The notes below the pieces were generated by a model. It ran no database searches. It saw nothing but the letters and a program-made list of their open reading frames with translations, and had not been told where the DNA came from. This document shows, piece by piece, positions 333 through 63,146 of a DNA stretch of 64,000 nucleotides. Source of the DNA: Mustelus asterias (Eukaryota); NCBI RefSeq assembly GCF_964213995.1, contig NC_135825.1:11904001-11968000 (forward strand). The letters are read 5' to 3'. How positions within the stretch are numbered: position 1 is the stretch's first letter; every line of letters starts with the position of its first letter. The position numbers and the translations under genes were made by a program.

Positions 333-650
333 CAATGCTGCTCTGTATCACATAACTGCAATTCCCAGTTGTATCGAAGACCAACACATTAACCATTTCA
401 CTGGATTTTTCTCCCTGGTTATTTGAGGCTGTGCAGTAATATTGATGATGTTGCTGTTTGAAGGATTGACAATGTAGATCCAGTTTATTGGTGTCAGAGA
501 TCTTTGAATCTTCAGGCGGGGTCTTTTCATACCATGTGTACTGAATGGGAAGTGATCCCTGGACAGACTCACAGGAGACGGACACTGAGCCCCCAGAACA
601 TGAGGCATTTGGTGGTGATAGAAATTTAAGTTCAGGAACAGACATTGGTT
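333..650 (-). CDS. Gene A exon 3: C2-type Ig domain (EPMSVPELKFLSPP...VSCESVQGSLPIQYTWY...YYCTASN...SSI); gene continues off the left edge
   Basis: Acceptor ttcttccccacag at 651, donor G|GTAAGT at 332; 318 nt, phase 1-1; C..W..YxC Ig core; paralogous to exons at 22.4, 24.9 and 27.7 kb. Confidence 0.9.
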
Positions 651-1914
651 CTGTGGGGAAGAAACAGACATTCAGACACTTGAGTGAACATCTAAGAATC
701 AAACAATCTGTGATTTTTATCCCTTCAGCATCTCAGCCAGGGGCGGCCATGTTGGAATCTCACCAGCACATCCACGTCTCCACGGGGGCGAATGCTTAAC
801 TGGGGTTTGTACGTGGGAAGTGTGTTTGTGCTGTCCAGAAAGTTAGAAATACCCAGGAAAGTCGAGTTTGTGCTGAATTTAACAGCAAAATCTGACCAGA
901 ACTCTTCCAGAATTGAGAGTCTGGCTGGAGTTTGAGCAGAAAAGTCTGTTGTGTAAGATTTGGAATTGGTGGGAGTGTGAGTTCGGGGGACAGTAGCGAG
1001 GAGGGAATCAGGGAGGCTTTATTGGTTGGGGCAGAGTTGGCCAATCATGGGGGTGGGGGGGGCGGGGGGGCGGTGATTGTACAATATATTTGCCTGGGGG
1101 CCAGGGTGAAGCACTCCTGTGCCCCTGGGACCTGAATCCGTGTTGGAAAAGCTGCTGGACCCATCAAATCCCACCGCCATGAACACATTGGGTCCAGAGT
1201 TTGGTCCTGTACTGCTGTGTTTGCTGAACTCCATTGCTGCTGCCCTAGTTGGCAGCTCAGGTGCAGACATTCCCCTAGCCCATCCTGCACGTCTGCACCC
1301 TTCGCTTGAACCATGAGGCAGACTAACCCAAACCTGAATGTGAATCATGTTGTGCTGAGGTCATGTTGGTGAGGGTAGTATATTCACCGTGTGGGGATGA
1401 TCCCAATGGCAGGCATGATGATAAGGTGCAAATGGATTAAAATTACGTTCTCGCCATTTGACTAAACCAGACTGATTTTTAACCATTCCGCCATATTTTC
1501 CGTTCACGATGCCAAGCGCGCCCATTACCAACTCCGCACAGTTCCTCTTCTGGCCACTGCTGTGTTGTTGCTGCAGGAACTGGATAGTTGTCAGCCAATC
1601 AGATTAGACTCTCCAAGGCAGACTCCCTCCGGAGCGAGGGGCGGATCTCTCACCCAATAAGAATCAGCACACATACGAGCGTTAAATGACATCACGCTAT
1701 CCCAAAAATTCAGGCCCCCGGATCCTGTTAAATTCTGTCGATTGATTCTATTTTATTATATTTGAGGGAATTATACCAGAAGGTACAACTGGCTCTTAAC
1801 TATTTGTCCTTTTGTTTTAATCTAAAAACAAACACCTGACAGTGTGACAAGTTGGTCAGTCCATGAATTGGGTTTGTGGGAGGCAGATTTCCCCAACTTT
1901 GCCCTCTGAGGGGA

Positions 1915-2245
1915 GCTGGTGGCGTGGTGGTATTGTCACTGATCTAGTAATCCAAAAAACCCAGGGTAATGCTCTGGGGACCTGAGTTCGAATCCTGGCA
2001 CGGCAGATGAATTTGAATTCACTAAAAATCTGGAATAAAAAGTCTAATGATGACCAAGGAACAATTGTCATAAAAACCCAACTGGTTCACTAATGCCCTT
2101 TAGAGAAGGAAATCTGCCATCCTTCCCTTATCTGGCCTACATGTGACTCCAGATCCACAGCAATGTGGTTGAATCTTAAAATGCCCTCAGGGATGCTACT
2201 AATAAATGTTGGCCCAGCCAGTGATGCGCACATCCCATGAATCAA
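1915..2245 (+). mobile_element. tRNA-derived SINE (second family; related pieces at ~58376-58430 + and ~61255-61585 -)
   Basis: A-box-like tggcgtggtgg, B-box gttcgaatcc, shared body between copies. Confidence 0.65.
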
Positions 2246-2916
2246 TGAAAAAACAAGCTGCCAGACTCTGCACTGCAGTGGATCCTCGGGATACCGGAGC
2301 TGTCAATGTTTCCTTCCAGAGAAAACCATGGCCTGAATTTTTCGCTCATCATGTGTGTGCACTCAGCGAGTCTGGACGCGGGTACGAAACCTCAGCCCCG
2401 AAGCGCAGTTCCACACTGGCTGTCCAATGAATGGGGGAAGAGCCACTGTGGAGCTGTCTCAGGGAGCTGTTGACCTGTGAAAAATATCAATGTTAAAACG
2501 ATACCGCGAGTGTCAGGGCAGCACGATCACACACACAGCTCAGGCCCCAGACACATTTCTTACTTTAATATGAACCCTGACCTTTCATTCCGCCCTGGAT
2601 CGAGGTTGCAGCTAAAATGTAAAGGTCACCTGGCCAATTGGCCCACCCGCCAACTGTAAAGGCAGACGGGCAACTTAAAGTCCTGGACAATTGGTGTTTA
2701 ATGAATTTAAATTGACTTTTGCATGGCTGGCAGCCGCACTTCCGACTTGCGCATGTGCCTGGCGACTGAAATATTGAGAGAAGGCATATTGCCGTCGGGG
2801 TGTGATTTTACCCACATTCGGGTAGGGCACACGCCTGATCTTTATACATAAAATTCTGGCCATTGATCAGAGATTTCAGTCAAGAGTAATAAAGATAATC
2901 ACTGAGAATAACGCAC

Positions 2917-3228
2917 CGTTAGATATTTGTAGGTTTACGTTATACAATGGATCGAGACCGGATGCTTCAATTCCACAGCTGTACCATCCTGCATCTCCTG
3001 AGCGAAGATCCTTCATGGTGACAACAAATACTCTTCGTGACTTGTTATCTGTGACTGAAATTCTTCCATTTTGCCAATTTGTCTTTGCTACAACATCACA
3101 TTGGCGATTCCAGCCGCGACACCAATATTTCACGTGTGACCGGTACCACACACCATAGTGACAATCGATTGTGATCGATCTTCCCACAATTCCTCTCACT
3201 TCCTCTTTTGCCCACAATGCACCTGAAA
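2917..3228 (-). CDS. Gene A exon 2: CD300/pIgR-like V-type Ig domain
   Basis: Acceptor ctcctcag|TTTCAG, donor G|GTGCGT; 312 nt, phase 1-1; ITIDC..KYWC-x6-C..DAGWYSCG with the extra C-C' cysteine pair typical of CD300/pIgR/TREM V domains. Confidence 0.92.
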
Positions 3229-4183: not shown

Positions 4184-7100
4184 TGATGCGCGATTAAATC
4201 ACTCGGGAGGCTAGATTGTACCTGGGAAATAAAGGCTTCTATTACTGACAAGAATGGAGCACACTATACACAATACAATCCCAGACTAAAGGGTCACCAG
4301 GCAGTGCAGTGACCTTTATACTTCCCCTGGTAGGCGAAGCCAACTGGAGTGTACCACAGAACAATATCAACAGGTAGAACAGTCCAACCCTAACCCCAAC
4401 AGTAACTACAGTAACATATCTACAAACACCCATAGTGCTGACCATCCATGGCTCAGCACTCATAGTGGTAACCAACTATGGTTCACCACATTCACCCCTC
4501 CTTTAAAACAAAGGCCGGCGGGGCTAAAAAAAACAGAACAACTGTTCATATATTCACAAGTTCAGTCGTATTGGAGGACCGCACCGTCTCTGCGACCTCC
4601 TCAACACTGGCGGTAACGTCGGTTCTGGTAACCGTGGTGACCTTCTCTCCAAGGCGGTGTCCAGTGACTCCTCCAGTTCCTCACGGACAGGTGGACCACG
4701 AGGTGGCGACAATCTGCTGGACTCGAGCACGCCTCGAGGTGGTGACAATCTCCTGGACTCAGGCAAGCTGTACACGGGAGTAAGAGGATTAAGTGGTGGT
4801 CCCGATACTGCCCGCGCCGTGTCAGGAGGGGAGATAAGGGTCGGGTGGTCCCTAACTAGGGGTGTGGAAGCGACTGGGGTTTCCAAGTCCCCTGCAGGCG
4901 CCAGATCTCTAATAGAGACCGTGTCTTCTCGCCCGTCAGGATATGCCACATAGGCATATTGAGGGTTGGCGTGGAGGAGATGGACCTGTTCAACCAAAGG
5001 GTCGGACTTGCGGGTCCTAACATGCCGCCGCAGGAGGACAGGTCCTGAGTGCGTCAACCAAGACGGTAATGAGGTCCCAGAGGAAGACTTCCTAGGGAAG
5101 GAAAACATCCTCTCATGTGGAGTAGCGTTGGTTGCCGTACACAGGAGTGAGCGGATAGAATGGAGCGCATCAGAGAGTACCTCTTGCCAACGGGAGACTG
5201 GAAGACCTTTACACCTCAATGCCAGTAAGACAGCCTTCCAGACTGTAGCATTTTCTCGTTCAACCTGTCCGTTACCCCTAGGGTTGTAACTCGTAGTTCT
5301 ATTTGAGGCAATCCCTTTTGAGAGCAGGTATTGCCTCAAGTCGTCACTCATGAATGACGAGCCCCTATCACTGTGGACATAGCTGGGGTAACCGAACAGG
5401 GTGAAAAGATCCCGTAATGCTTTGATAACCGTGGCAGTGGTCGTATCAGAACAGGGAATGACAAAAGGGAATCGTGAGTACTCGTCAATCACATTGAGGA
5501 AGTACACGTTCCGATCTGTCGAAGGAAGGGGGCCCTTGAAGTCCACACTCAGTCTTTCGAAAGGGCGTGTGGCTTTAATGAGGTGTGCCCTGTCAGGTCG
5601 GTAGAAGTGCGGTTTGCATTCAGCACATACCTGGCAGCTTCGGGTTATTGACCTGACATCCTCCACTGAGTAGGGTAGATTCCGGGCCTTTACGAAATGG
5701 AAGAGCCGAGTGACCTCCGGATGGCAGAGATCATTGCGGAGGGCCTGTAATCGATTCTCCTGCACACTTGCACATGTTGCACGCGACAGGGCATCTGAGG
5801 GCTCATTGAGTTTCCCTGGACGGTACATGATATCATAATTGTAGGTGGAGAGTTCGATTCTCCACCTCAAGATTTTATCATTTTTGATCTTACCCCATAA
5901 CGTGTTGTTGAATATGAACGCCACGGACCGCTGGTCCGTGAGCAAGGTGAATCGTTTTCCCGCCAAGTAATGGCGCCAATACCGAACGGCCTCCACAATG
6001 GCCTGAGCCTCTTTTTCCACTGCAGAGTGCCGAATTTCGGGGCCTTGGAGGGTGCGAGAGAAAAAAGCGACGGGCCTGCCCGCCTGGTTAAGTGTGGCGG
6101 CCAGGGCGAAATCAGATGCATCACTCTCCACCTGAAAGGGGATGGACTCATCAACGGCGTGCATCGTGGCTTTCGCAATGTCGGCTTTTATCCCTTCAAA
6201 AGCTAAGCGAGCCTCTGTTGCTAGGGGAAAGGAGGTAGACTTGATGAGCGGACGGGCTTTGTCTGCATAATTGGGAACCCACTGTGCATAGTATGAGAAG
6301 AAGCCTAAGCATCTTCTCAGTGCTTTGATGCTAGTGGGCAGGGGAAGTTCCAGGAGGGGACGCATACGGTCTGGATCAGGGCCAAGGACCCCGTTTTCCA
6401 CCACGTATCCGAAAATTGCTAGGCGGCGCTTGCGAAATACGCACTTCTCCCTGTTGTAGGTCAGATTCAGGCGAGACGCAGTGCGTAAAAATCTAAGGAG
6501 GTTGGCATCGTGGTCCTGCTGGTCATGGCCGCAGATAGTGACATTATCCAGGTACGGGAAGGTAGCCCGCAGCCCGTTCTGGTCCACCATTCAGCCCATT
6601 GCATGCTGGAAGACCGAGACCCCATTCGTGACGCCAAAGGGAACCCTTAAAAAGTGATAAAGACAACCATCCGTCTCAAAGGCCGTGTATTTTTGGTCCT
6701 CTGGATGAATGGGGAGCTGGTGGTAAGCTGACTTCAAGTCAATGGTGGAGAACACCCGGTACTGCGCAATCTGGTTGACCATGTCAGATATGCGCGGGAG
6801 AGGATACGCATCCAGCTGCGTATATCTATTAATGGTCTGACTATAGTCTATGACCATCCAGGGTTTGTTTCCAGTTTTAACCACCACTACTTGCGCTGTC
6901 CATGGACTAGAGCTAGGTTGGATGATCCCTTCCCTGAGGAGCCGCTGAACTTCAGATCGAATAAAGATCCGATCCTCAGCGCTGTAACACCTGCTCTTGG
7001 TTGCGATGGGCTTGCAGCCTGGCACAAGATTCTCGAATAAAGATGGTGGGGTGATTCTGAGTGTCGAGAGGCTACACGTGGAGCGCGCTGGGCAATTTGG

Positions 7101-8115
7101 AGGCTGCTGTGCTTCCACTGAAAGTGGAGGGAGTGGTCCATTGTACTGCAGGGTTACACGCCTCAGGTGGACCATAAAGTCTAGTCCCAGGAGCATCGGA
7201 GCGCAAAGGTGCGGTAACGCAAGGAGCCTGAAGTTCTCGTAAACTGTGCCCCGCACCGTTAGGTTGACCACGCAGCTCCCTAGCACGGTAACAGACCGGG
7301 ACCTCGACGCCATCGAAATTGTCTGTCTGACAGTCCGTACTCGGAGACCGCACCGTTTCACGGTGTCAGGGTGAATGAAGCTCTCCGTGCTCCCGCTGTC
7401 AAACAAACAATGAATTTGGCGTCCATTTACCTCTATGCCCATCATGGACTTGTCGAGTCTGTGAGGCTTGGCCTGGTCCAGGATGATTGACGCCACCATT
7501 GGGTCTTGGGTGCCACTGCAGGCAGCTGAGATGGTTGATGATGATGACCCCTGCTGGTCGTCCGCAGTCGGTGCCGACCAAAATGGCTGCGCCCATGGAT
7601 CGCACGTGGTCGGTGGCGCTAAAAGTGGCGGCCCCTGCAGGTCGCACATGTCTTGCATCTCCGTCGTCAGGAATGGCGGCGCTCTGGAATCGCACATGGT
7701 GGAAGACCTCGAAGACGCTGGAGACAAGGAGGCAGGCTCAGGAGAATCACACGCCGCACTGCTATGTTTGGAGAGTGATTTGGTCCTGCAGACTTTGGCA
7801 TAATGCCCTTTCTTTCCACACGCGGAGCACAATAGCGTTCTAGCTGGACATCGCTGCCGAGGGTGTTTCGCCAATCCACAGAAGTAACACCGTGGGCCTC
7901 CTGGAGCTGCCGCCGTCGTCAGGTCCGAGGTTGGAAACACAATCGTGCAGTTTTTCGGAGCCTCTGGGTAGAGTTGAGTCGGTGGCTGTACTTGCCACGA
8001 TGTTCCCACGTGGTCGGTGGGGTACGTTTCTAGACTTCTGGAGACTGTCTCCATAGCGTCGGCCAATTCTACTGTCTTAGCGAGGTCTAGATTACCTTGC
8101 TCTAGCAGCCGTGGT
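4184..8115 (-). mobile_element. Ty3/Gypsy LTR retrotransposon, 5'-truncated (gag Zn-knuckles, PR, RT, RNase H, IN, PPT, 3' LTR 4184-4490)
   Basis: CCHC knuckles, LFDSGS protease, RT, RNase H (SDASD), IN (HPE..CQVC, DFKG, HSDRG, E); PPT at ~4491-4505; one nonsense codon at 6591-6593; lies in gene A intron 1. Confidence 0.95.
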
Positions 8116-8790: not shown

Positions 8791-8802
8791 AGTGAAGTAG
8801 AG

Positions 8803-10109: not shown

Positions 10110-10146
10110 CGGGCAGAGAGCAAATGAGGAGAATCAAAATCCACAT
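10110..10146 (-). CDS. Gene A exon 1: signal peptide MWILILLICSLP(V)
   Basis: ATG plus 37-nt hydrophobic exon ending G|GTGAGT (phase 1); joins the V exon to give MWILILLICSLPVSGALW. Confidence 0.88.
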
Positions 10147-11998: not shown

Positions 11999-13324
11999 CT
12001 GATGTGCAGAAAGAGGATAACAATGATTAAATCTGAGTGACGGTTTAAGCTGCTTCTCCATTTTCACCAACAGTCACATATTTCACCGGCTGATGGGGAG
12101 TTGTTTCCAAATCGTTTCTTGAGTCCTGTCCAGTTCTAGGTGAGGAACACACGGGGACTCTGTTAAAGTGAATGTGCCAGAGACTGAAGTGGTGCTCAGT
12201 GTGAGAACATTCTAGCAGCAGATCCTGGGGGAGTCACTGGGAGACAGCATCATTCTGGGTCTGGTCATCAATCCCCAGCTTTAGTTTGTGTCAACCTGTG
12301 TCAAAATGATTCGTTGTGTCGACCCCCTAAAACATTCTCAGCCACCCTCAGGTTGTAATCCCCTGATCTCGGGCACTGACAAATCATTGTGCAAGTGTTG
12401 AGCCGAAGATTCACATCTCTCCTTCAGACAGAGTGCTGAGGATGTTGATTAGATTCACAGCTTGAAGCAGCTAATTCGGTTTTTGTTAACAACTCGATGA
12501 ACTTTTGGGGTTAAAAGGATCAAGGGATGTGGGGGAAGGGAGGGATCAGGATATTGAATTTGATGATCAGCCATGATCAAAATGAATGGCAGAGCAGGCT
12601 TGAAGGGCCGAATGGCCTCCTCCTGCTTCTAGTTTCTATGTTACATCTGACCAAATAGTTCAAGTTCCGTAAAGTGTGAAAATGTCTGTGTCTGTGTCAA
12701 AAACCACATTCTGGTGGTTGTGAACTGAGCTGTTTTTTAAATGTCTGTTCCTCTGACACGAACAATGACAAGGCAAGGTCCTGCTGTGGAATTCCTCCCC
12801 CACTGGGATGTTGATCCTATTTGATCTGGAATGGTTCAGTGATCCACCCACAATCTGTAGATCAGCCTGACCCAGGGGTTTACCTTCCCAGGAATTGTGC
12901 TCGGTGGGCGGGCGCTGGGTTAATGATGGTGACATGAGCTCTCAAAATTCCACCCTCACCTTCCTCTACAATGGAGGTCTCAGCTGAATATTACCGTCGC
13001 TGTCTGTGCCAGCTTCATGCTGCCTATTGGGTCCAGTTACCCTTACAACAGATGGCACAGCCCTCTATCTGCCTCCTGTTGACAGTTGCTGCCAGGAGGG
13101 GGTTACGACGGGTGGAATTTTCCCTTCTGGAGTCGAAGGCTGGAAGTTTCTGGCATTATCAAGGTGGGAATCATCGGCGGAGATTCAAAGGTCAAGGCTA
13201 ATGCCAAGGGAACTAAATATAAACTTCCGTGTTTTCTATCTACATATCACACATCAGAACATCGGTCCAGTCAGGTTTTTTTAATTGTGTTTTTGTGAAT
13301 GTGAGCTGAGAATGATGTCCTCAC

Positions 13325-17349: not shown

Positions 17350-17379
17350 TCAACTTTGAGAATCGGGTTCATTGAGTGG
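17350..17379 (-). CDS. Gene B likely terminal coding exon: PLNEPDSQS*
   Basis: Strong acceptor ttttctttttcag, phase 0 matching the TM exon donor; gives a short tail without tyrosine motifs. Confidence 0.5.
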   Translation of the reverse strand, partial: PLNEPDSQS

Positions 17380-19787: not shown

Positions 19788-19887
19788 CTGAGATTTTCTC
19801 GTGTACCATGTGACCGAAATAACACAAATCACCAGGAGGGTAAAGAGCCCCCAGCGAATCACATTCCAGATGAAGGAACAGAGCAAA
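19788..19887 (-). CDS. Gene B transmembrane exon: (C)LLCSFIWNVIRWGLFTLLVICVISVTWYTRKSQ
   Basis: Acceptor tatttcttccag, donor CAG|GTGAGG; 100 nt, phase 2 to 0; hydrophobic helix followed by basic stop-transfer RK; phase 2 matches the donor at 22111. Confidence 0.85.
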
Positions 19888-22111: not shown

Positions 22112-22460
22112 CACTCGCTTTCCGTCCTTGCCACATCAACACTGTTGATCTGTGTCACACAACTGCAATTCTCCCGTGATCTGTGGATCACTGACACTGT
22201 AACCGTTTCACTGGACTTTTCTCCCTGGTGATTTGAGGCTGTGCAGTAATATTGATGATGTTGCTGTGTGAAGGATTGACAATGTAGATCCAGTTTATTG
22301 GTGTCAGAGATCTTTGAATCTTCAGGCGGGGTCTTTTCATACCATGTGTACTGAATGGGAAGTGATCCCTGGACAGACTCACAGGAGACGGACACTGAGC
22401 CCCCAGAACATGAGGCATTTGGTGGTGATAGAAATCTAAGTTCAGGAACAGACACGGGTT
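22112..22460 (-). CDS. Gene B Ig domain 6 (C2, membrane-proximal)
   Basis: Acceptor ttcctttctacag, donor TG|GTAAGA; 349 nt, phase 1 to 2. Confidence 0.85.
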
Positions 22461-23248: not shown

Positions 23249-23557
23249 CGTCAGATATTTGTAGCTTGACAGGAAATATTGAAAGGAGGCCGGGCTTATC
23301 AATACCACAGCTGTACCATCCTGCATCTCCTGAGCGAAGATCCTCCATAGTAACAACAAATAATCCTGGTGTCTTGTTATCTGTGATCGACATTCTCCCT
23401 CGCCGTCCATCTGGATCGTCTGATTTTACCAAACCAGAGCACTGACGACTCCAAGATTTCACATGTGACTGGGACAATTTGTCATAGTGACAATCTATAG
23501 TGATCGATCTTCCCAAAACTCCTGTTACTTTATTTTTTGCCCACAATACACTTGGAG
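23249..23557 (-). CDS. Gene B Ig domain 5 (V, lacks the first C-C' cysteine)
   Basis: Acceptor gtcttttcag, donor G|GTACAT; 309 nt, phase 1-1; open frame. Confidence 0.88.
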
Positions 23558-24643: not shown

Positions 24644-24967
24644 CAATGCTGCTGATTTGTGTTAAATAACTGCAGTCATTCTCTGAAATGTGGATCACTG
24701 ACACCGTAACCATTTCACTGGATTTTTCTCCCTGGTGATTTGAGGCTGTGCAGTAATATTGATGATGTTGCTGTGTGAAGGATTGACAATGTAGATCCAG
24801 TTTATTGGTGTCAGAGATCTTTGAATCTTCAGACGGGGCCTTTTCATACCATGTGTACTGAATGGGAAGTGATCCCTGGACAGACTCACAGGAGACGGAC
24901 ACTGAGCCCCCAGAACATGAGGCATTTGGTGGTGATAGAAATCTAAGTTCAGGAACAGACACGGGTT
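24644..24967 (-). CDS. Gene B Ig domain 4 (C2)
   Basis: Acceptor ttcctttctacag, donor G|GTAAAT; 324 nt, phase 1-1. Confidence 0.88.
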
Positions 24968-34240: not shown

Positions 34241-34361
34241 CGCACGGACGGACACACATAAATACCACACACAAAGACACACACACACATATGACCACCG
34301 ACACACAGACACACACACAGACACACACATACACCCCACACACAGCCATACACACATAAAT

Positions 34362-44612: not shown

Positions 44613-44618
44613 ACATAG

Positions 44619-49204: not shown

Positions 49205-49241
49205 CAGGCAGAGAGCAAATGAGGAGAATCAAAATCCACAT
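49205..49241 (-). CDS. Gene B leader exon, proximal copy (MWILILLICSLP)
   Basis: 37 nt, G|GTGAGT donor; nearly identical to 10110-10146. Confidence 0.82.
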
Positions 49242-50163: not shown

Positions 50164-50171
50164 TTACTCAC

Positions 50172-50208
50172 CGGGCAGAGAGCAAATGAGGAGAATCAAA
50201 ATCCACAT
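50172..50208 (-). CDS. Gene B leader exon, distal copy (MWILILLICSLP)
   Basis: 37 nt, intact ATG and G|GTGAGT donor. Confidence 0.7.
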
Positions 50209-51419: not shown

Positions 51420-54400
51420 AGGGTGAGTAAAGTGCTGTGATTTATTTATTTATTTAATCCGTTTTTTTCGCAGGCTTTTTTCAAGGGTTTAAACTCTGAG
51501 GAAGTGGGAGTAGGCTGCAGGGGATTCTGGGAGATTGTGTTTTTTAGTATAAAAGTCACTCTATACGGCGGTCAGCGTCTGGAGCGGGCAGTAGAGTGAG
51601 TGGGAAGCAGAGTGAAAGCTGTCAGGGCTTTGGCCCACAGGGCTTGGGCGGTAAGGGCGAGGCAGGGTAAGTTATTTTTATCCAGACCTTTCCAGGATAA
51701 GGGTAACTATGAATGATAGGCCAGTTCGGTGCTTCCGGTGTGGGATGTGGGAGTTCCTGGAAACACCTAGCCTCCCGGCGGTTCACATTTGCGCCAGGTG
51801 CGTGGAACTGCAGCTCCTGAGGGACCGCATCACGGAACTGGAGCTGCAGATTGCTGACCTTGGTCTAGTCAGAGAGAATGAGAGAATAATTGACATGAGT
51901 TATAGGGAACTAGTTACACCGGGGCATCGGGAGGAAGACACATGGGTCACAGTTAGGAGGAGTAAAGGTCAGAAGGGTAACGTACCAGAGAGTACTCCAG
52001 TGGCTGTCTCTCATAATAGGAAGGGCTCGGCGACAGGTGTGAGAGGGGAGGGGAGTGAGCAATTAGTGGAGGGGTCACCTGTGGTTGTCCCCCTCCAAAA
52101 CAAGTATATTGTTTTGGATAGTGTGGAGGAGGATGACTCTCCAGGGGTAAGCCACAGTGACCAGGTCACTGGCACAGAGTCAGGCTCTGTGGCCCGGAAA
52201 GGAAAGAGAGGGGTGAGGAGAGCAATAGTGGTGGGGGATGCGTCGGTTAGAGGCACGGACAGGCGATTCTGTGGGTGCGAACGGGACTCCAGGATGGTAG
52301 TCTGCCTACCTGGTGCTGGGGTAATGGATGTCTCCGAGCGGATAGGAGGCATCTTAAAAGGGGAAGATAAAGAAACAGATGTCATTGTACACATTGGTGC
52401 AAATGACGTAGATAGGAAGAGCAGGGGGATCCTATGAGAGCAATTCAGGGAGTTGGGAAATAGGCTAAAATGTAGGGCCTCCAGGGTGGCCATCTCTGGG
52501 CTGCTCCCAATGCCTCGTGCCAGTGAGGCTAAGAATAGGGAGTTAGTACAATTGAATGCTTGGCTAAAGGACTGGTCCAGGAGGGAGGGCTTCATTTTCC
52601 TAGATCAATGGGAAGTTTTCAGGAGAGGATGGCACCTGTACAAGAAGGACGGGTCACAACTAAGTTGGAAGGGCATGAATATCATGGCTGGGAGTTTTGC
52701 TAGTGCAGTTCGGGGGGGTTTAAACTAGTATGGCAGGGGGGTGGGGATCAAAATATTAGGTCTACAAGTGTAGAGGCTGGGGACGAGCTTGGGGCTGGGA
52801 CAAGGCTGGCAAAGAAGAAGAGCACTCTGGGGGAGGATGACCTCACTGGGCCTGGAGGTCTGGAGTGCTTATACTTCAATGCAAGGAGCGTAGCAGGTAA
52901 GACAGACGAACTTAGGGCCTTAATGCTCACGAGGAATTTGGATGTGGTTGCGGTGACAGAGACTTGGTTGAAAGCGGGACAGGACTGGCAGCTGAATATT
53001 CCGGGGTACAAGTGTTTTAGGCGAGACAGAGGAGGGGCCAAAAGAGGTGGGGGAGTAGCAGTATTAGTTGGAGAGCATATTACAGCGGTGCAGAGGGAGG
53101 ACAATTCAGAGGGGTCGTGTAACGAGGCACTCTGGGTGGTGCTTAGAAACAGGAAGGGCGCAGTCACTATGTTGGGGGTATACTACAGGCCCCCCAACAG
53201 CCCAAGGGAAGTGGAAGAACGGATATGTCAGGAGATACTGGATAGGTGCAGGAAAAATAGGGTTGTTGTAGTGGGAGACTTCAATTTCCCTGGTATAGAC
53301 TGGAAATCGCTGCGAGCTGGGACTCTGAATGGGGACGAGTTTGTAAAATCGTACAGGAGGGGTCTTTGGAACAATATGTAGATAGCCCGACTAGAGAGGG
53401 GGCTATACTGGACCTAGTACTGGGGAATGAGCCCGGTCAGGTCTTCAAAGTTTCGGTAGGGGAACATGTAGCAAATAGTGACCACAATTCTGTTAGCTTT
53501 AGGATAGTGATGGAAAAGGATGAGTGGTGTCCCAAGGGTAAGGTGTTGAATTGGGGGAAGGCTAACTTAAGTGGGATTAGGCATAAATTGGCAGCTCTTG
53601 ATTGGGAGAGGCTGTTTGAGGGTAAATCCACATCTGGCATGTGGGAGTCTTTTAAGGAACAGTTGTTAGGGCTACAGGACAGGCATCTGCCTGTAAAAAA
53701 GGATAGGAAGGGTAGGATTCGAGAACCGTGGATAGCCAGGGAAATTGAGGGACTGGTCAAAAAGAAAGGAGAGGCGTATGTCAGGTCCAGGCACCTAAAA
53801 ACAGAGGGAGCTCTGGAGGAGTACAAAGAAAGTAGGAAAGAACTCAAACGGGGAATTAGAAGGGCAAAAAGGGGTCACGAAATGTCCTTGGCAGACAGGA
53901 TTAAGGAGAATCCCAAGGCATTTTATTCATACGTTAGGAACAGAAGGGTTGTCAGGGAAAAAATTGGACCTCTCAGGGACAAAAGTGGGGAATTATGCTT
54001 GGAGCCCAAAGAGGTAGGGGAGATCCTAAATGAATACTTTGCGTCGGTATTCACAAAGGAGAGGGATGTGTTGACTGGGAGTGTCTCGGAGGGGAGTGTT
54101 GAACCGTTGGAGAAAAATCTCCATTACAAGGGAGGAAGTGTTATGTTTGTTAGAGAATATAAAGACTGACAAATCCCCAGGGCCTGATGGAATCTATCCA
54201 AGGCTGCTCAGGGAGACGAGAGATGAAATCGCTGGGCCTCTGACGCAAATCTTTGTCTCGTCACTGGACACAGGTGAGGTCCCAGAGGATTGGAGGATAG
54301 CTAATGTGGTCCCGTTATTTAAGAAGGGTAGGAAGGATAACCCTGGTAATTAGAGGTTGGTGAGCTTGACGTCCGTGGTGGGGAAGTTGTTGGAGGAGAT

Positions 54401-56074
54401 TCTTAGAGATAGGATGTATGCGCATTTAGAAAGGAATCAACTCATTAACGATAGTCAGCATGGTTTTGTGAGAGGGAGGTCATGCCTCACTAACCTGGTG
54501 GAGTTTTTTGAAGAAGTGACTAGAATGGTTGACGAGGGAAGGGCCGTGGATGTCGTCTATATGGACTTTAGTAAAGCGTTTGACAAAGTCCCTCATGGTA
54601 GGCTGGTGAAAAAGGTTGGATCTCATGGGATAAAGGGGGAGGTGGCAAGATGGGTGGAGAACTGGCTTGGTCACAGAAGACAGAGGGTGGTAGTGGAAGG
54701 GTCGTTTTCCAGCTGGAGGCATGTGACTAGTGGTGTTCCGCAGGGCTCTGTATTGGGACCTCTGCTGTTTGTGATTTATATAAACGATCTGGAAGAAGGT
54801 GTAACTGGGGTGATCAGTAAGTTTGCGGACAACACAAAATTGGCAGGACTTGCAGATAGTGAGGAGCATTGTCAGAGGCTACAGAAGGATATAGATAGGC
54901 TGGAAATTAGGGCAAAGAAATGGCAGATGGAGTTCAATCCTGATAAATGCGAAGTGATGCATTTTGGTAGAAATAATGTAGGGAGGAGCTATACGATAAA
55001 TGGTAGAACCATAAAGGGTGTAGATACGCAGAGGGACCTGGGTGTGCAAGTCCACAGATCCTTGAAGGTGACGTCACAGGTGGAGAAGGTGGTGAAGAAG
55101 GTATATGGCATGCTTGCCTTTATAGGACGGGGCATAGAGTATAAAAGTTGGGGTCTGATGTTGCAGATGTATAGAACGTTGGTTCGGCCGCATTTGGAAT
55201 ACTGCGTCCAGTTCTGGTCGCCACACTACCAGAAAGACGTGGAGGCTTTGGAGAGAGTACAGAGGAGGTTTACCAGGATGTTGCCTGGTATGGAGGGGCT
55301 TGGTTATGAGGAGAGATTGGGTAAACTGGGGTTGTTCTCTCTGGAAAGACGGAGGATGAGGGGAGACTTAATAGAGGTGTATAAAATTATGAAAGGCATA
55401 GATAGGGTGAACGGTGGGAAGCTTTTCCCCAGGTCGGTGGTGACGTTCACGAGGGGTCATAGGTTCAAGGTGAAGGGGGGGAGGTTTAACACAGATATCA
55501 GAATGACATATTTTACACAGAGGGTGGTGGGGGCCTGGAATGCGCTGCCAGGCAAGGTGGTGGAGGCGGACACACTGGGAACGTTTAAGACTTATCTAGA
55601 TAGCCATATCATAGAAATCATAGAAACCCTACAGTACAGAAAGAGGCCATTCGGCCCATCGAGTCTACACCGACCACAATCCCATCCAGGCCCTACCCCC
55701 ATATCCCTACATATCTTACCCACTAATCCCTCTAACCTACGCATCTCAGGACACGAAGGGGCAATTTTAGCATGGCCAATCAACCTAACCCGCACATCTT
55801 TGGACTGTGGGAGGAAACCGGAGTACCCGAAGGAAACCCACGCAGACACGAGGAGAATGTGCAAACTCCACACAGACAGTGACCCAAGCCGGGAATCGAA
55901 CCCAGGTCCCTGGAGCTGTGAAGCAGCAGTGCTAACCACTGTGCTACCGTGTCGCCCATATGAACGGAGTGGGAATGGAGGGATACAAAAGAATGGTCTA
56001 GTTTGGACCAGGGAGCAGCATGGGCTTGGAGGGCCGAAGGGCCTGTTCCTGTGCTGTATTGTTCTTTGTTCTTG
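51420..56074 (+). mobile_element. Near full-length, inactivated CR1 LINE: ORF1 (Zn finger, leucine zipper, SGNH esterase) and ORF2 (APE endonuclease plus RT); 5' boundary approximate
   Basis: CxxC..CxxC, IVVGDA, HIGAND; YFNARS, VTETWL, GDFN, SDH; YMDFSKAFD, GVPQGS, FADN; stops near 52437 and 54353, two frameshifts; (ttgttct)n tail. Confidence 0.95.
55610..55955 (-). mobile_element. HE1/V-SINE inserted in the CR1 ORF2 3' end
   Basis: 6-bp TSD ccatat at 55604-55609 and 55956-55961. Confidence 0.92.
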
Positions 56075-58429
56075 TGGATGAATGTACTTTATCAGAGCTG
56101 CATGTTTCACACTGGGAGCTTTATTCTCGATTGTCTAGTTTCACATAGTGATCAAGCTGTTGGCTAAACAGCTTTGACTCTCAGCATTCTTCACTGTAAC
56201 CTTTATTGATGTAGACGTTATCTCGGCCAGTTTGGTGTTCTGTCCAAAATTTATCTCTCCATCAACATTGCCAAGAAACAGATTATCTGGTGATTATGGG
56301 CGTGATTTTCCAGCCGCACTCGCCATGAAATCTGGAAAATCCCACCCTGAGGTCAACGGATCCTCCCATGGTCTGCCCCCCACCCGTTACTATTCCTGTG
56401 GCAGACGGAAGGAGAAAATTCACCAATTTTACTTTGCACTTTGTGGGATCTTGCAGTGCACAAATTGGCTACTGTGCTTCCTGCAGCAAATCTTCCAAAG
56501 TACATTACAGGCAGTAAGGTGCTTGGGGATGTTCTGAGGCGAAGGCACTGATAAATGCAAGCCATTTTTTCCAGTTGTTTAGTGAAGGGTTTTACAGTAT
56601 TCACCGACACCGTTTGACAGCTCCACTGCGTATATGAGTGAAGGTGGAAGGACAAGTTGAGAAGATTGTTAAAGAAAAACACATTTCAGATCCTTGGGTT
56701 TATTGATAGAGGGACAGAGTTACAAAAGCAAAGAAGTTATGCTTCACCTTTATGAAGCATTGGTTAGTCATCCATTGTGTTCAGTTCTGGGCAGGTAAAT
56801 GCACTTTCTAAATACAAGTTATTGTTGTAGTGCTTTGTTTGTTCTCATTATATTGACAAAGTTATAGTTGCTCATATTATCATTGCATTTTATTTGTTTG
56901 TAACATTTAGAGTATAACGTGCCGTGTATCAATCCTCATGAACATACAGATACAGTGAAACTGCAGTTTCAGTTTTAACAGATAAATGCTCAAATTGGAC
57001 AGACATTTAAAATGGTTGAATGAGAATCTCAGACTAAAACAAGTTGTATCTGTTTGAAAAAAAAACTCTGTGATGACAGTGAGTAAAGCTACACGCACTT
57101 AGAAACAACAGCAAGAATTTGAATAGTATTACATGAGAAATACTACACAGAAACAGGCCATTCAGTCCATCTATTTTTATAATCCACAGGAGCCCACTCC
57201 CAATCTATCAACAGGCTGGGATTGGTGTCTATAATTCTGCTTCCTCATTCTAATCAGGAGATTGTTGTGAAGCACCCCGAGGAAACCCACGCAGACACGG
57301 GGAGAACGTGCAGTCTCCACACAGACAGTGACCCAAGCCCAGAATCGAACCCGGGTCCTTGGCGCTGAGGCAGCAGTGCTAACCACTGTGCCACTGTGCA
57401 CCCTCACCTTTCTGTTTCCTTTTCTCTCACAAAATCACCTCCTCCACTCTTAAAAGCATCAAAACTATTTGCCTCAGTCTCTTGTGGTAGAAAGCTCCAC
57501 AGTCTATCATCATTCTCTGAGTAATGTTATTGCTCCTTATTCCCTTGTCGGATGTATTGGTAACTATCTTGTGTTAATCGCCTCCCAAAAATGGGAGTAT
57601 TTTCTTTGCAGGTACCTAATCCAACCGATTCAGCATTTTAAAGACCCCTGTCATGTCTCCACTAAATCTTCCCTTTTCTGATGAAAACTACCCTACCTGT
57701 CCAATATTTCCCTGTGGCTGCACCATCCCCATTCTAAAACATCCTTGTCAATCTTTTTTTGTACTTTCTCCAGTGTTTCTTTGTCATTTTTACAGTCCGG
57801 ACACCAGAGTTGTGCAAGGTGCTGTAAGTGCAGTCTAACTAAGGTTGTACATAACCTGGCTCCTTTTGAATTTGATCCCACTAGAATGAAATCTCAATGC
57901 TTTGTCAACACTTGAATTTTTTTACTGACCAGTTGTATGGCTTCTAATTATTTGTTAACCTGTATCTCTAGATTTTCTTGCCCTTCTAACTCATTTCAGA
58001 AGATTATTGTCTAAGGTAGAGATTGTTTATTATTTCAAAGTGCATCATCTTGCATTTATCTGGAGGAAATTTTATTTGTTACTTACCTGCCCAGTCTGCA
58101 AGTTTTCTAATCGATTTCTGTATTATGTTATACTCTGCCTCAGTGACAGCCACACACTCAATTTTGGCAGAACTTGCACATTTTCATAGGGTTACTTATT
58201 CCCAAGTCCAATTATTTATGTACATCATAATTAACAGTGATTTCCGTCCTGATTCTTGTGGGATATCACTTTCTATCTTCTTCCAATCTGAATAACTGTT
58301 CTTTTCTCAATTCCCCCCACTCTCTGATTTTTATTTTTTTCACCAATTTGCTGTCTTTTCAGCTTTTAGTTGAAAGGCAGTGGCGTTGTGGTATTGTCCC
58401 TGGACTAGTAATCCAGAGACCCTTATCCT

Positions 58430-60420: not shown

Positions 60421-60772
60421 AATCCAAACCAGGAGCTCATTGTTAACTGATGAAATATGACAATAAAACCAAATTGGCAGCAGCAGTAAAACTGGAGGGA
60501 ACAACTCAGAGAGCACAGACGTATTGACAAAATAAGTTTGTGGACAGTTCATCGCGGATGAAGATTAATTGCAAAATAGGAAGGAACAATATTCATCACA
60601 TGCTCTACATGAATACTTTTCTTAATGAGTTATGTTAGTATATATTGCCATTTCAGATTCATCACAGTTTGTGTGTTGTTCTTTGGGAGCTATCATTGAA
60701 CCTTGACACATCCTCATTGTTAAACGAGTGCCTCGACCTCTCACCTCTTCAGGCTGACAATTTCTTTTGAAT

Positions 60773-60907
60773 CTACAGTGTTGCATATGTGACTCCATCC
60801 TCATTGTTAATGAACCGGACAATTTGCTTGCTGCGTGTTTCTGCTGAGTTCCCTCGATTGCGCTTTACACTGGCATACACAATGCTCTCTTCTACAACTG
60901 CCAATTG
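60773..60907 (-). CDS. Gene C terminal cytoplasmic exon with two ITIMs: QLAVVEESIVYASVKRNRGNSAETRSKQIVRFINNEDGVTYATL*
   Basis: Acceptor ttttttatattgcag, phase 0, 135 nt; IVYASV and VTYATL both match (I/V/L/S)xYxx(L/V). Confidence 0.82.
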   Translation of the reverse strand, partial: QLAVVEESIVYASVKRNRGNSAETRSKQIVRFINNEDGVTYATL

Positions 60908-63093
60908 CTGCAATATAAAAAATAAAGATCCAATTTATTTCCACTTAACTTGAATGGTGATTTGTGGAGAAATCGATTTCTAGATCATTGCAAATCAGTT
61001 TACAAGTGATCACAACATGAGATAATCTATCTCCAGCGGTGAAACACATCATTTGTCCCAACTCCACATAAACCTGTCCAGTTTATCTCATCAAAATAAC
61101 ATTCAAATCCTTTCCTTCCCATGTGCTTATCCAGCTTCTGTTTGAATGTATTTCAGCTGTTTGCCGCAACTGTTCCCTGTGGTGGAAAATTCCACATTCT
61201 GAACACTCTGGGTAAAGATGTTTCTCTTGAATTTGCTGTTAGATTCACCTTTTTGATTCACACATGGGATGTGGGTGTCGCTGGCTGGGCCAACATTTGT
61301 TGCCCATCTCTAATTGAACTGAATGGCTTGCTCGGCCATTTCACGGAGCATTTATGAGTCACATGTAGGCCAGGCCAGGTACGGGCAGCGGATTTCCTAA
61401 GGGAAATGTCCCGCAAGGACATTAGTGAACCAAATAGGTTTTTACAACAATCTACAATAGTTTCACGACTTTTAATTCCAGATTTTTATTGAGTTCTGCT
61501 TTGGTGGGATTTGGACCCAGATCCCCAGAGGATGATCCTGGGTCTTTGGATTACTAGCCCAGTGACAATATCACGACACCACTACCTGTTATTAATGACT
61601 ATCCACTATTTATGGCCACTGGTTTTGGTCTTGCCTGCAAGTGGAAACATCTTTGTTATCTCTACCTAAATCTTGAAGATCTCAAACAGATCGTTAATTA
61701 AAGAGAGGCCCAGCTTGCTGAATCTCGCCTTAAGTTTTTAATTTTCCAAGGCAAAATGTGATATGGCATTTTGCTGCCATCTAGCGAAATTATACTTCGC
61801 ACCCTCGACAGACCAGATGAAGATTTTGGGGTTTTAAATCGGCCTTTATTCACCCTTTAGCGAGGAAGTCTGCCTCCCACAAGGTGGCGTACTGGTACAT
61901 GGCATGCACCATTCTATCTTTGTGTATCTTACATATAATTCTCATACACCAATCACAAGTCAACATTTGTTCAGAACTCATTGATATCCAATTACAGCGA
62001 ATAGTTCTGACATTTATGTCAGGTAAATCTAGTTAACCAGTTATAGCCTCTATATGCTTGTCTAATTATAATGATTAATTACTAACAAGGTTTGCCTACA
62101 TGGTTACACCAACCAAACATCCACGCCTGCTGTTATGGCTTGTGATTATCAGAGTTCTCCCCCTCTGTCTCTTGGGCAGCTTGTGTGTGCTGCCCATCTG
62201 TAAGTGTGGGAGCTGCACTGAAACATCTTCACAGCAGTTTCCCAGTGAACCTGTAATTAATTCACAGGGGAACACTACTGCATTCAATGATGCTAATCCC
62301 TTCAGAATGATAGCATCTTTCATATTCCTATCTCACAGTAGAACCAGCAGCGATCCTAAATTAGAATTAGCTACATCCATATTTAACACAAAGAAGTACA
62401 TTTATTTGGAGCCTTCAACATAGTAAAATGCCCCAAGACAGAAACTAAACCAAGGAAGGAGATATTAGTGAAGGTGACCAAAATCTATCAAAGGCTTAAG
62501 GCAGACATTTTAAGGAATGCCATAAAGGGATAATGAAGTGATGAATTAGACAGAGAGGATTCCAGAGCTTAGGGACACGATGGGTGAAGTTACAGCAAAG
62601 CCAACGCTCATCACACAACAGATGGACTTGTTAGCGTTTGATAGCATTTTCTTATTCTGAAGTTTTGTTCTGTTTTGGCAGTAATACCTGAGACATTACA
62701 GGAATATACGAGAGTGTAAACTGAAAAATGTCATCAAATCCAAAGTTGGGATGCAATAATTAACGAGGTCTCATTTCTGACGGTAAAGCCAAGGTCTATC
62801 TCCCTTTATGCATTTCCAATTAGATTAAAGATTGGAGCCAATCCAAGGTGCAGTTCAGTAAAACAGCATCAATACATTTAAGGCAAATCTACAGAAGCAA
62901 ATGTGAGTGAAAGGAACAGAAGCTTATGCTAGTCGGGTTAGATAAAGAGGGATGGGAGGAGGCTTGTGTTGAGCATCAAATCCAGCATGGACTAGTTGGC
63001 CTGAATGGCCTATTTCAGTCCTGTCAATTCTATATCATCCAGGTTTGAAAATTTCCAGACATCAGTCAGAGAATTCATACTTCATCTCCTCAC

Positions 63094-63146
63094 CTGATTG
63101 TCAATAAGATTATCGTTATCTCTTCCATGGCTTATGTCATTTGTAT
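63094..63146 (-). CDS. Gene C penultimate cytoplasmic exon: xTNDISHGRDNDNLIDNQ
   Basis: Acceptor ttttcatttttcag, donor CAG|GTGAGG; 53 nt, phase 1 to 0, in frame with the ITIM exon. Confidence 0.72.

What the first reader, a model, noticed from the sequence alone, without database searches (positions are those of the whole stretch)
333..63146. Paired activating/inhibitory Ig receptor cluster in a cartilaginous fish
Seen: three head-to-tail minus-strand genes. Gene B has a charged-TM, short-tail layout, gene C ends in two ITIMs, and gene A is a close paralog of B. The leader, TM and ITIM exons are short and are missing from or obscured in the ORF track. Known: clustered activating/inhibitory pairs are the hallmark of CD300, LILR/KIR, SIRP and teleost NITR/LITR loci, and a CD300-like modular family (MDIR) was described from skate. 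Inference: this is a shark paired-receptor locus. That gene C has the same ectodomain family cannot be seen, because it lies beyond the right edge.
Basis: partly seen in the sequence, partly recalled or inferred. Interest (0 to 1): 0.85.

Follow-up and report, generated by a model that had tools for sequence, protein, structure and literature searches.

The report
Shark paired activating/inhibitory MDIR receptor genes
This stretch of a smooth-hound shark chromosome carries three neighbouring immune-receptor genes of the known MDIR family, two built to switch cells on and one ending in switch-off motifs, so it is a real but largely expected locus.

Summary
The minus strand carries eight intact Ig exons (four pIgR/CD300-type V, four FCRL-type C2), three copies of a leader exon, an NxxR transmembrane exon and a two-ITIM tail exon. 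Splice sites are canonical and phases fit.

The window is Mustelus asterias. RefSeq model P0163 holds 7 of 12 tested exon translations exactly. It fuses genes B and A and skips B's transmembrane exon.

- Gene B: leader, (V-C2)x3, stalk, Arg transmembrane exon, short tail. The tail exon (17379-17350) is inferred.
- Gene A: a close paralogue (V 87 of 101 residues) that runs off the left edge.
- Gene C: only two cytoplasmic exons lie in the window. They are 94% and 86% identical to the tail of the inhibitory paralogue P0158. Its ectodomain lies outside the window and was not seen.

Skate MDIR3 matches at 52-56% (V) and 67-70% (C2), so this is a new member of a known family.

No RNA evidence could be obtained; the three runs guessed as RNA held unspliced DNA.

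The likely mechanism is NxxR pairing with FcRgamma against ITIM recruitment of SHP phosphatases. This is inferred, not shown.

The scan's unchecked notes record the same family on the left flank and at about +65 kb and +501 kb.

The parts
49205..49241 (-). Gene B leader exon (MWILILLICSLP, then G|GTGAGT, phase 0->1)
   Evidence: Exact match to residues 1-12 of P0163.
50172..50208 (-). Second, orphan copy of the leader exon, with the same peptide and the same donor
   Evidence: The block 50163-50331 is 87.6% identical to 49196-49364. It is not known which copy is used.
38452..38763 (-). Gene B distal V exon (Va, pIgR/CD300 type, with the extra C-C' cysteine pair)
   Evidence: Pfam V-set 37.4 bits. 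PDB: CLM-1/CD300f E 4.6e-17, pIgR E 2.4e-45 over 4 stretches. 100% identical to P0163 residues 13-116, which use the acceptor at 38763.
27394..27717 (-). Gene B C2 exon 1 (intact, with Tyr->Cys in PFQCTW; skipped by the RefSeq model)
25756..26064 (-). Gene B V exon 2 (Vb type, lacks the first Cys of the C-C' pair)
   Evidence: Pfam V-set 45.7 bits. PDB search. Exact match in P0163.
24644..24967 (-). Gene B C2 exon 2
   Evidence: Exact match in P0163.
23249..23557 (-). Gene B V exon 3 (Vb type)
   Evidence: Pfam V-set 41.3 bits. Exact match in P0163.
22112..22460 (-). Gene B C2 exon 3 plus stalk (phase 1->2, donor TG|GTAAGA)
   Evidence: FCRL5 9loc total E 1.4e-41 over six repeats; best single domain i-E 8e-07. 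The first 90 of 115 residues are in P0163.
19788..19887 (-). Gene B transmembrane exon with the NxxR motif (WNVIRW), phase 2->0, donor CAG|GTGAGG
   Evidence: tblastn E 5.4e-09 to P0017 and 1.2e-07 to P0114. 75% identical to gene A's TM. Absent from the RefSeq model.
17350..17379 (-). Gene B terminal coding exon, inferred (PLNEPDSQS*; acceptor tttctttttcag; ATTAAA/AATAAA-like signal at 17216)
   Evidence: It resembles the tails after the TM in relatives, such as LLNESDHHRSANVAR in P0177 and SLSESDAPNATNVGK in gene A. There is no transcript evidence.
10110..10146 (-). Gene A leader exon
   Evidence: P0163 residues 524-551 match 10194-10111 at 100%.
2917..3228 (-). Gene A distal V exon (Va)
   Evidence: Pfam V-set 35.6 bits. 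Exact match in P0163.
333..650 (-). Gene A C2 exon 1 (phase 1->1). The gene runs on beyond the left edge.
   Evidence: Exact match in P0163, which continues V-C2-stalk-NxxR TM-short tail.
63094..63146 (-). Gene C cytoplasmic exon (xTNDISHGRDNDNLIDNQ, phase 1->0)
   Evidence: 94% identical to P0158 residues 1348-1364.
60773..60907 (-). Gene C last coding exon, with two ITIMs (IVYASV and VTYATL, tyrosines 30 residues apart) and a TAG stop
   Evidence: E 4.8e-13 to P0099. 86% identical to P0158.
60625..60772 (-). Decayed remainder of a longer four-motif tail. It holds stop codons; the third motif has lost its Tyr; the fourth motif (AIYTNITH) is out of frame.
   Evidence: The alignment to P0099 runs on past the stop. 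Compare the tail of P0176 and the frames.
12048..12125 (-). Second tail-like piece between genes B and A (DSRNDLETTPHQPVKYVTVGENGEAA*); either a relic or an alternative last exon
   Evidence: The matches are weak (E 0.36 to P0012) and the acceptor is poor.
4554..8066 (-). Ty3/gypsy-type retroelement in gene A intron 1
   Evidence: Pfam protease, RVT_1, RNase H and rve.
30980..34357 (-). Related, more broken gypsy-type element in gene B intron 2
   Evidence: 80.9% identical to 4461-7610.
51709..56081 (+). LINE (endonuclease plus reverse transcriptase) between genes C and B
   Evidence: Pfam Exo_endo_phos and RVT_1.

Best explanation
The window is part of a tandem cluster of MDIR-type immune receptor genes in the starry smooth-hound, Mustelus asterias. 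All three genes lie on the minus strand.

Genes A and B encode type I membrane proteins. Their ectodomains alternate pIgR/CD300-type V domains with FCRL-type C2 domains. Gene B is leader, V-C2-V-C2-V-C2, stalk. Gene A is at least V-C2 inside the window and V-C2-V-C2 in the RefSeq model. Each has a transmembrane helix with Asn-x-x-Arg near its outer end and a tail of about 15 residues without a signalling motif.

Inferred mechanism for A and B: the buried Arg pairs with an ITAM adaptor of the FcRgamma type, so ligand binding activates the cell.

Gene C contributes only its last two cytoplasmic exons to the window. They end in two ITIMs 30 residues apart. Inferred mechanism for C: once phosphorylated, the ITIMs recruit SHP-1/SHP-2-type phosphatases and inhibit the cell.

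Shown here: the exons, their phases, their homology, the species, and membership of the family.

Inferred: the splicing, gene B's last exon, the adaptor, the phosphatases, and that gene C carries the same kind of ectodomain. The ligand is unknown.
For: - Domains: Pfam and PDB typing of the domains.
- Exon structure: canonical splice sites and matching phases, including the unusual phase 2 junction between C2_3 and the TM exon.
- Species and junctions: 7 of 12 exon translations are exact in RefSeq P0163 of Mustelus asterias. Its junctions agree with the exon ends given here.
- Family: skate MDIR3 (P0196) matches at E 1e-34 to 1e-48. All 46 of 46 relatives at E <= 1e-30 are from elasmobranchs.
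- Both signalling types: of 69 V+C2 proteins among 197 fetched, 21 have an NxxR-like TM, 30 have at least two ITIM-like motifs without such a TM, and 4 have both.
- Shared ectodomain modules: gene B's Vb and C2 modules are 88-93% identical to the inhibitory P0158, and Va is 84-88% identical to the third V of the inhibitory P0176. In the V-domain tree, domains of activating and inhibitory proteins mix within a species. The elasmobranch clade has SH-aLRT 98 against bichir, caecilian and turtle pIgR-like domains.
- Gene C tail: 94% and 86% identical to the tail of P0158, whose model carries (V-C2-V-C2)x3.
- Adaptor: TMs with NxxR associate with FcRgamma in Xenopus FcR-like receptors and are homologous to those of LILRA2, PIR-A, NKp46, GPVI, OSCAR and FcalphaR (PMC2413239, passages read).
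Against: - No RNA. None of the 7 runs listed is on record as RNA. The three runs guessed as RNA hold contigs that cross exon-intron borders unspliced, at 90-95% likeness (records 2, 6, 9, 14 and 22). None of the 15 joints listed sits at a predicted splice site; 108 more joints were not shown.
- The RefSeq model joins B to A, skips B's TM exon and skips C2_1.
- Gene B's last exon rests on a short resemblance only, and a second tail-like piece lies at 12125-12048.
- Gene C's TM exon and ectodomain are outside the window. No other Mustelus protein of 802-2551 residues carries its tail.
- Gene C's tail is cut short compared with its relatives.
- Per-domain support for the FCRL label is modest (best i-E 8e-07).
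- The adaptor and phosphatase steps were not tested.
Confidence: 0.8

Rival explanations
1. A and B are one gene, as RefSeq has it. In this reading, a single long transcript encodes a nine-Ig-domain receptor, and B's transmembrane exon is not used.
For: P0163 runs from B's leader through B's Ig exons into A's 5' exon and on to A's TM and tail.
Against: - The model places a translated 5' UTR and a full signal peptide (MWILILLICSLP) in the middle of the ectodomain.
- It needs a donor inside C2_3.
- B has its own intact TM exon in the right phase, and a tail exon like those of its relatives.
- Similar run-ons from a tail into the next leader are visible in the models P0017, P0164 and P0181 of other species. 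Four of the 69 V+C2 proteins carry both signalling types, as fused models of neighbouring genes would. This looks like a habit of automatic annotation in tandem arrays.
Confidence: 0.07
2. Gene C's two exons are a dead remnant of an inhibitory tail and are no longer joined to a working receptor.
For: - The tail stops after motif 2 of an ancestral four-motif tail, with further stops and a frame shift behind it.
- No TM exon lies in 63147-64000.
- No Mustelus protein of 802-2551 residues carries this tail.
Against: - Both exons keep good splice sites, open frames and matching phases.
- Both ITIMs are intact, and two ITIMs suffice in many receptors.
- Unchecked notes of the scan place a V/C2 exon array 10-27 kb to the right.
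- P0005, the neighbour locus of P0158 by number, is an 11-domain model with no TM or tail and could be its ectodomain.
Confidence: 0.15
3. Gene B is not purely activating. In this reading it splices to the piece at 12125-12048, whose tail holds the ITIM-like VKYVTV, which would give a receptor with both an Arg TM and an inhibitory motif.
For: The piece has a phase 0 acceptor (cag|GAC), an open frame ending in a stop, and resembles tails of relatives (RNDLETTPHQPV against RSDQLDPHQPV of P0012, E 0.36).
Against: - The matches are not significant.
- The acceptor is weak and is preceded by another AG 11 bases upstream, which would shift the frame.
- The nearer exon at 17379 has a strong acceptor and fits shark relatives better.
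Confidence: 0.08

Closest known systems
Modular domain immune-type receptors (MDIR) of the clearnose skate
   Same: MDIR3 (P0196) has V-V-C2-V-C2, a TM and a multi-ITIM tail. It matches the window's V exons at 52-56% and its C2 exons at 67-70%. The family is described as a multigene family of activating and inhibitory receptors related to CD300, TREM, FCAR and pIgR (PMC3031540, passages read).
   Different: The window is from a shark, not a skate. The Vb subtype lacks one Cys of the C-C' pair and groups only with shark domains in the tree. The genomic layout, the truncated tail of gene C and the NxxR reading of the TM are described here from the genome. The original 2006 MDIR paper was not available, so its details are recalled, not read.
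CD300 / CMRF35-like molecules and pIgR
   Same: The V domains are of this type. The best single-domain match is CLM-1/CD300f at E 4.6e-17, and pIgR scores E 2.4e-45 summed over 4 stretches. Va has the extra C-C' cysteine pair.
   Different: From recall, CD300 has one V domain and pIgR has V domains only; no call tested this. Here V alternates with C2. The TM is of the NxxR type, not the mid-helix Lys/Glu type recalled for CD300, and the tails are unlike pIgR's.
FCRL / FcR-like receptors (human FCRL5, Xenopus XFL)
   Same: The C2 domains match FCRL5 best (total E 1.4e-41, best single domain 8e-07). The NxxR TM matches the XFL TM1 type, which binds FcRgamma (PMC2413239). ITIM partners exist in both.
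   Different: FCRL ectodomains have no V domains. The FCRL signal peptide is split 30/21 bp over two exons (PMC2413239); here a 37-base leader exon joins the V exon directly.
LILR/KIR, SIRP, teleost NITR/LITR paired receptors
   Same: The logic is the same: clustered genes with near-identical ectodomain modules and opposite signalling ends.
   Different: The Ig domain families are different, and common descent with these families was not tested.

Membership tests
MDIR | Sequence kinship with skate MDIR proteins | tested here: met
   The exons match MDIR3 (P0196) as follows: V 52-56% (E 1e-34 to 1e-39), C2 67-70% (E 1e-44 to 1e-48), ITIM exon 30% (E 8e-04). P0196 was itself found with the Mustelus paralogue P0005 at E 4.9e-182.
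MDIR | Modular ectodomain with a variable number of Ig domains of a few subtypes | tested here: met
   Gene B is Va-C2-Vb-C2-Vb-C2 and gene A starts Va-C2. Relatives range from V-C2 to 18 or more domains.
MDIR | Forms with a charged TM and forms with ITIM tails in one multigene family | tested here: met
   There is an NxxR TM exon at 19887-19788 and an ITIM exon at 60907-60773. Of 69 family proteins, 21 have the TM type and 30 have the ITIM type.
Paired receptors (general concept) | Activating and inhibitory members share closely similar ectodomains | tested here: inconclusive
   The feature is met for gene B against the inhibitory paralogues P0158 (Vb and C2, 88-93%) and P0176 (Va, 84-88%). 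It is not testable for gene C itself, because its ectodomain lies outside the window.
CD300 | A single V-type Ig domain with the C-C' disulfide (the single-domain architecture is recalled, not tested) | tested here: not met
   The V type is met for Va. The proteins, however, have 2-6 or more domains, including C2.
pIgR | Ectodomain of V-type domains only, with a long sorting tail (recalled, not tested) | tested here: not met
   C2 exons alternate with V exons. The tails are either about 15 residues long or carry ITIMs.
FCRL | C2/I-type domains only, with a split 30/21 bp signal peptide | tested here: not met
   V domains are present. The leader is one 37-base exon joined directly to the V exon. 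The rule is taken from PMC2413239.
FcRgamma-associated receptors | NxxR motif at the outer end of the TM | tested here: met
   WNVIRW is at residues 8-13 of the 33-residue TM exon. The motif is defined in PMC2413239.
FcRgamma-associated receptors | Physical association with FcRgamma | not testable with these tools
   This needs co-expression and co-precipitation.

The most novel reading that the evidence does not exclude
These mosaic receptors could be the immunoglobulin receptors of cartilaginous fish.

Each half of the ectodomain comes from a family that binds antibody in other vertebrates. pIgR, Fc alpha/mu R and FCMR use this V type. FcR and FCRL use this C2 type. The activating members also carry the FcRgamma-type TM.

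If that is right, the activating and inhibitory pairs would set thresholds for responses to IgM, IgW or IgNAR complexes.

From recall, not from any call here, no Fc receptor or pIgR has been pinned down in sharks.
Probability: 0.12. Interest if true: 0.8.

Novelty: new member of a known kind. Interest (0 to 1): 0.35.

Why it matters
It gives a clean exon-level picture of an MDIR locus in a shark. Two activating genes and the end of an inhibitory one lie head to tail, with ectodomain modules shared between the two signalling types.

It shows that the public RefSeq model fuses two genes and misses a transmembrane exon. This matters to anyone counting or expressing these receptors.

It also puts a testable idea on the table. 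The NxxR helix points to FcRgamma as the partner, and the pIgR-like plus FCRL-like make-up makes antibody a ligand worth testing.

It does not overturn anything. Paired receptors and the MDIR family have been known in cartilaginous fish since 2006.

Tried and rejected
- RNA evidence. The look-up of sequencing runs gave 7 runs, none on record as RNA. Read laying on 18991-24990 with X1-X4 showed that the three runs guessed as RNA are unspliced DNA of a relative, and X4 is DNA at about 99% likeness. Nothing can be said about expression.
- Gene C's TM exon. A hydrophobicity scan of 56000-64000, open frames of 60500-64000 and tblastn with P0158 found none above 63146.
- Gene C's product. A search with the tail region of P0158 found P0158 itself and two Stegostoma proteins, and no second Mustelus protein (3 hits among 309 candidates, length range 802-2551).
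- Gene B's last exon. A list of 21 acceptor-plus-short-ORF candidates was too loose on its own. Homology narrowed it to 17379 and, less likely, 12125.
- Read-through after the TM donor. It resembles the odd tails of the Hemiscyllium models P0017 and P0038 only at a level expected of DNA conservation. I rejected it as coding.
- The bacterial promoter/terminator scan does not apply to a vertebrate and was ignored.
- Paper searches. One search was swamped by skateboarding papers. (MDIR plus shark; paired receptors plus elasmobranch plus ITIM) found no paper. One search found nothing relevant. The original MDIR paper is not in the library: its title words occur only in 2 other papers. Supplements were not opened.
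- My first C2 signature regex was too strict and was replaced by phmmer domain calls.

Full report
WHAT IS THERE

The window has no N and no soft-masking. On the minus strand there are eight Ig exons. Four are V-set: 38763-38452, 26064-25756, 23557-23249 and 3228-2917. All four pass Pfam's V-set cut-off. Four are C2-like: 27717-27394, 24967-24644, 22460-22112 and 650-333. They hit Ig_3, Ig_2 and Ig_C17orf99 close to the cut-offs; 1 of 4 reaches Ig_3's cut-off and 2 of 4 reach Ig_2's.

Every one of these exons has an AG acceptor and a GT donor. The Ig exons are symmetric phase 1 cassettes, except the last C2 of gene B. That exon carries a stalk and ends in phase 2 (the end of C2_1 was corrected to 27394).

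The next exon, 19887-19788, starts in phase 2 and ends in phase 0. It reads LLCSFIWNVIRWGLFTLLVICVISVTWYTRKSQ: a transmembrane helix with Asn-x-x-Arg near its outer end.

A 37-base leader exon (MWILILLICSLP, donor G|GTGAGT) occurs three times, at 49241, 50208 and 10146.

At the right, 63146-63094 (phase 1->0) and 60907-60773 (phase 0, ending in TAG) encode xTNDISHGRDNDNLIDNQ and QLAVVEESIVYASVKRNRGNSAETRSKQIVRFINNEDGVTYATL*. The second holds two ITIMs with tyrosines 30 residues apart.

SPECIES AND PUBLIC ANNOTATION

A library-wide phmmer search with the distal V exon gave 2494 proteins at E <= 0.001 and 118 at E <= 1e-30. The best hit, P0005, is a RefSeq protein of Mustelus asterias.

A second search with P0005 listed 46 proteins at E <= 1e-30, all 46 from elasmobranchs. 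Five of them come from the same 58.7 Mb Mustelus contig.

One of these, P0163 ('Fc receptor-like protein 5'), contains 7 of my 12 exon translations as exact strings: B leader, B Va, B Vb_2, B C2_2, B Vb_3, A Va and A C2_1. It also holds the first 90 of 115 residues of B C2_3, and A's 5' exon at 100%. So the window is Mustelus asterias (Carcharhiniformes, Triakidae).

The public junctions agree with my exon ends. That includes the upstream acceptor at 38763 and 3228, which gives 'VSGALW'.

The public model is nevertheless wrong in shape. It skips B's first C2 exon, leaves C2_3 early, skips B's TM exon, and reads through A's 5' UTR and signal peptide into gene A. From that model, gene A continues left of the window as V-C2, a stalk, the TM IIWNVIRWGLFALLVICAVTVTWYPGKSK and the tail SLSESDAPNATNVGK.

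Similar run-ons from a tail into the next leader are visible in the models P0017, P0164 and P0181 of other species. Four of the 69 V+C2 proteins carry both an NxxR-like TM and ITIM-like motifs, as fused models would.

GENE B'S END

After the TM donor (CAG|GTGAGG) the best candidate for the last exon is 17379-17350. It has the acceptor tttctttttcag, starts in phase 0 and reads PLNEPDSQS*. It lines up with the tails that follow the TM in relatives: LLNESDHHRSANVAR (Heptranchias P0177/P0178), LLNESARHS... (Pristiophorus P0164) and SLSESDAPNATNVGK (gene A). An ATTAAA/AATAAA-like signal lies at 17216.

This is inference from a short resemblance. A second tail-like piece lies at 12125-12048 (DSRNDLETTPHQPVKYVTVGENGEAA*). 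Its matches are weak (E 0.36-0.37) and its acceptor is poor. I take it for a relic or a minor alternative. Either way the tail is short.

GENE C

Its two exons are 94% (17 residues) and 86% (44 residues, E 1.6e-21) identical to the tail of P0158. P0158 is a Mustelus model with (V-C2-V-C2)x3, an uncharged TM and this tail.

Against Heptranchias P0099 the tblastn alignment (E 4.8e-13) runs on through the stop codon. A fourth motif (AIYTNITH) survives out of frame. Gene C's tail is therefore a shortened version of the four-tyrosine tail seen in P0099 and P0176.

The TM exon and the ectodomain are not in the window. No other Mustelus protein of 802-2551 residues carries this tail. That gene C has the same kind of ectodomain is likely but not shown. 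Unchecked notes of the scan place a V/C2 exon array 10-27 kb to the right. P0005, an 11-domain model without a TM, is numbered next to P0158.

FAMILY

- V domains. They are of the pIgR/CD300 type. PDB phmmer gives pIgR E 2.4e-45 and 1.9e-37 summed over 3-4 domains. CLM-1/CD300f scores 4.6e-17 and 2.5e-14 as single domains. TREM2, NKp44 and FCMR score lower.
- C2 domains. They match FCRL5 best, at 1.4e-41 summed over six repeats. The best single domain has i-E 8e-07, and the next best chain, CD22, scores 7e-05.
- Skate MDIR3. P0196 is V-V-C2-V-C2-TM-ITIMs. It matches the window's V exons at 52-56% and its C2 exons at 67-70%.
- Signalling types. Of 197 proteins fetched, 69 have both domain types. 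Of these, 21 have a WxVxRW-type TM, 30 have at least two ITIM-like motifs behind the last Ig domain and no such TM, and 4 have both.
- V-domain tree. I chose 23 of the 197 proteins; identical domains and hits shorter than 75 profile positions were dropped. With the 4 window exons this gave 80 rows. The elasmobranch domains form a clade (SH-aLRT 98) apart from pIgR-like domains of a bichir, a caecilian and a turtle. MDIR3 sits with skates and rays. Va of A and B groups with the third V of the inhibitory P0176 (support 88, not starred). Vb groups with the Vb domains of P0158, P0159 and P0005. The tree has few columns and many open forks.
- The nearest non-elasmobranch relatives are V-only 'pIgR-like' proteins at 35-42% identity.

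MECHANISM

Shown: two genes with an NxxR TM and a short tail, and one tail with two ITIMs, in one cluster, with ectodomain modules shared at 84-93% between activating and inhibitory Mustelus genes.

Inferred from established knowledge: TMs with NxxR are homologous to those of LILRA2, PIR-A, NKp46, GPVI, OSCAR and FcalphaR. They mediate association with FcRgamma, which was tested for Xenopus XFL (PMC2413239, passages read). Tandem ITIMs about 30 residues apart fit the two SH2 domains of SHP-1/2 (recalled). The ligand is unknown.

TRANSCRIPTS

None could be obtained. Of the 7 runs listed, none is on record as RNA. The three runs guessed as RNA hold short contigs at mostly 90-95% likeness that cross exon-intron borders, for example 23028-23278, 23519-23699 and 19757-19980. 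None of the 15 listed joints is at a predicted splice site; 108 more were not shown. These runs are DNA of a related species. X4 is DNA at about 99% likeness.

COMPARISON AND NOVELTY

[quoted passage not shown] The original 2006 paper was not available; I recall it but did not read it.

Searches for MDIR with shark, and for paired receptors with elasmobranch and ITIM, found no paper in the library.

This is a new member of a known kind.

What is new:
- the exon-level map in a shark;
- the correction of the public model;
- the shortened tail of gene C;
- the explicit pIgR-V / FCRL-C2 / NxxR-TM mosaic.

The same family was noted elsewhere in this genome by the scan, unchecked: on the left flank, at about +65 kb and at about +501 kb.

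LIMITS

All searches used single exons. Supplements of papers were not seen.

Noticed in passing
50172-50208 (block 50163-50331): There is a third, orphan copy of the leader exon, about 1 kb upstream of gene B's leader. It has the same peptide and the same GTGAGT donor, and its block is 87.6% identical. It could be an alternative first exon or what is left of a lost gene.
   Followed up: partly
10099-10337 against 49194-49431: The 239 bases around the leader exons of A and B are 97.1% identical. That is higher than the neighbouring duplicated blocks (83-95%). It suggests a conserved promoter and first exon, or recent gene conversion.
   Followed up: no
27394-27717: Gene B's first C2 exon is intact but has Tyr->Cys in the conserved PIQYTW (here PFQCTW). 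It is the one Ig exon of gene B that the RefSeq model skips. Skipping it would give V-V-C2-V-C2, the layout of skate MDIR3.
   Followed up: partly
25756-26064, 23249-23557 and the C2 exons: Vb domains read KYWS/KSWS where Va reads KYWC, so one Cys of the extra C-C' pair is left alone. Each C2 exon has a fifth Cys (NDCSY, ENCSC or GNCSY) just before its end. In gene A that Cys is followed by a V that has both cysteines, so a simple C2-to-Vb disulfide does not fit every case.
   Followed up: partly
2917-3228 against 38452-38763: Between A and B the distal V exon has 14 amino-acid-changing and 4 silent codon differences. It is 93.6% identical, against 94.6% upstream and 97.4% downstream.
   Followed up: yes
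60625-60772: Behind gene C's stop, the decayed third and fourth tyrosine motifs of the ancestral tail can still be read. This points to a recent shortening of an inhibitory tail from four motifs to two.
   Followed up: yes
12048-12125: A tail-like open piece with an ITIM-like VKYVTV lies between genes B and A. It resembles both the short tails of activating relatives and the last motif of inhibitory tails, but only weakly.
   Followed up: partly
4554-8066 and 30980-34357: Two related gypsy-type elements (80.9% identical over about 3.1 kb) sit in introns of A and B, in the genes' own orientation. The copy in A keeps ORFs of 678 and 491 residues. The copy in B is more broken.
   Followed up: partly
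20690-20827: Intron sequence between gene B's last C2 exon and its TM exon is 93% identical, as translated, to the C-terminal 46 residues of RefSeq P0005. That paralogue's model therefore probably ends in intron sequence instead of its TM exon.
   Followed up: partly
22601 and 24971 (read laying): In the related organism A, one contig in each of X2 and X3 (the 810-letter record 24 in X3) joins 24971 back to 22601. The tandem V-C2 units may therefore be arranged or numbered differently in that species, or the contig may follow a paralogue.
   Followed up: no
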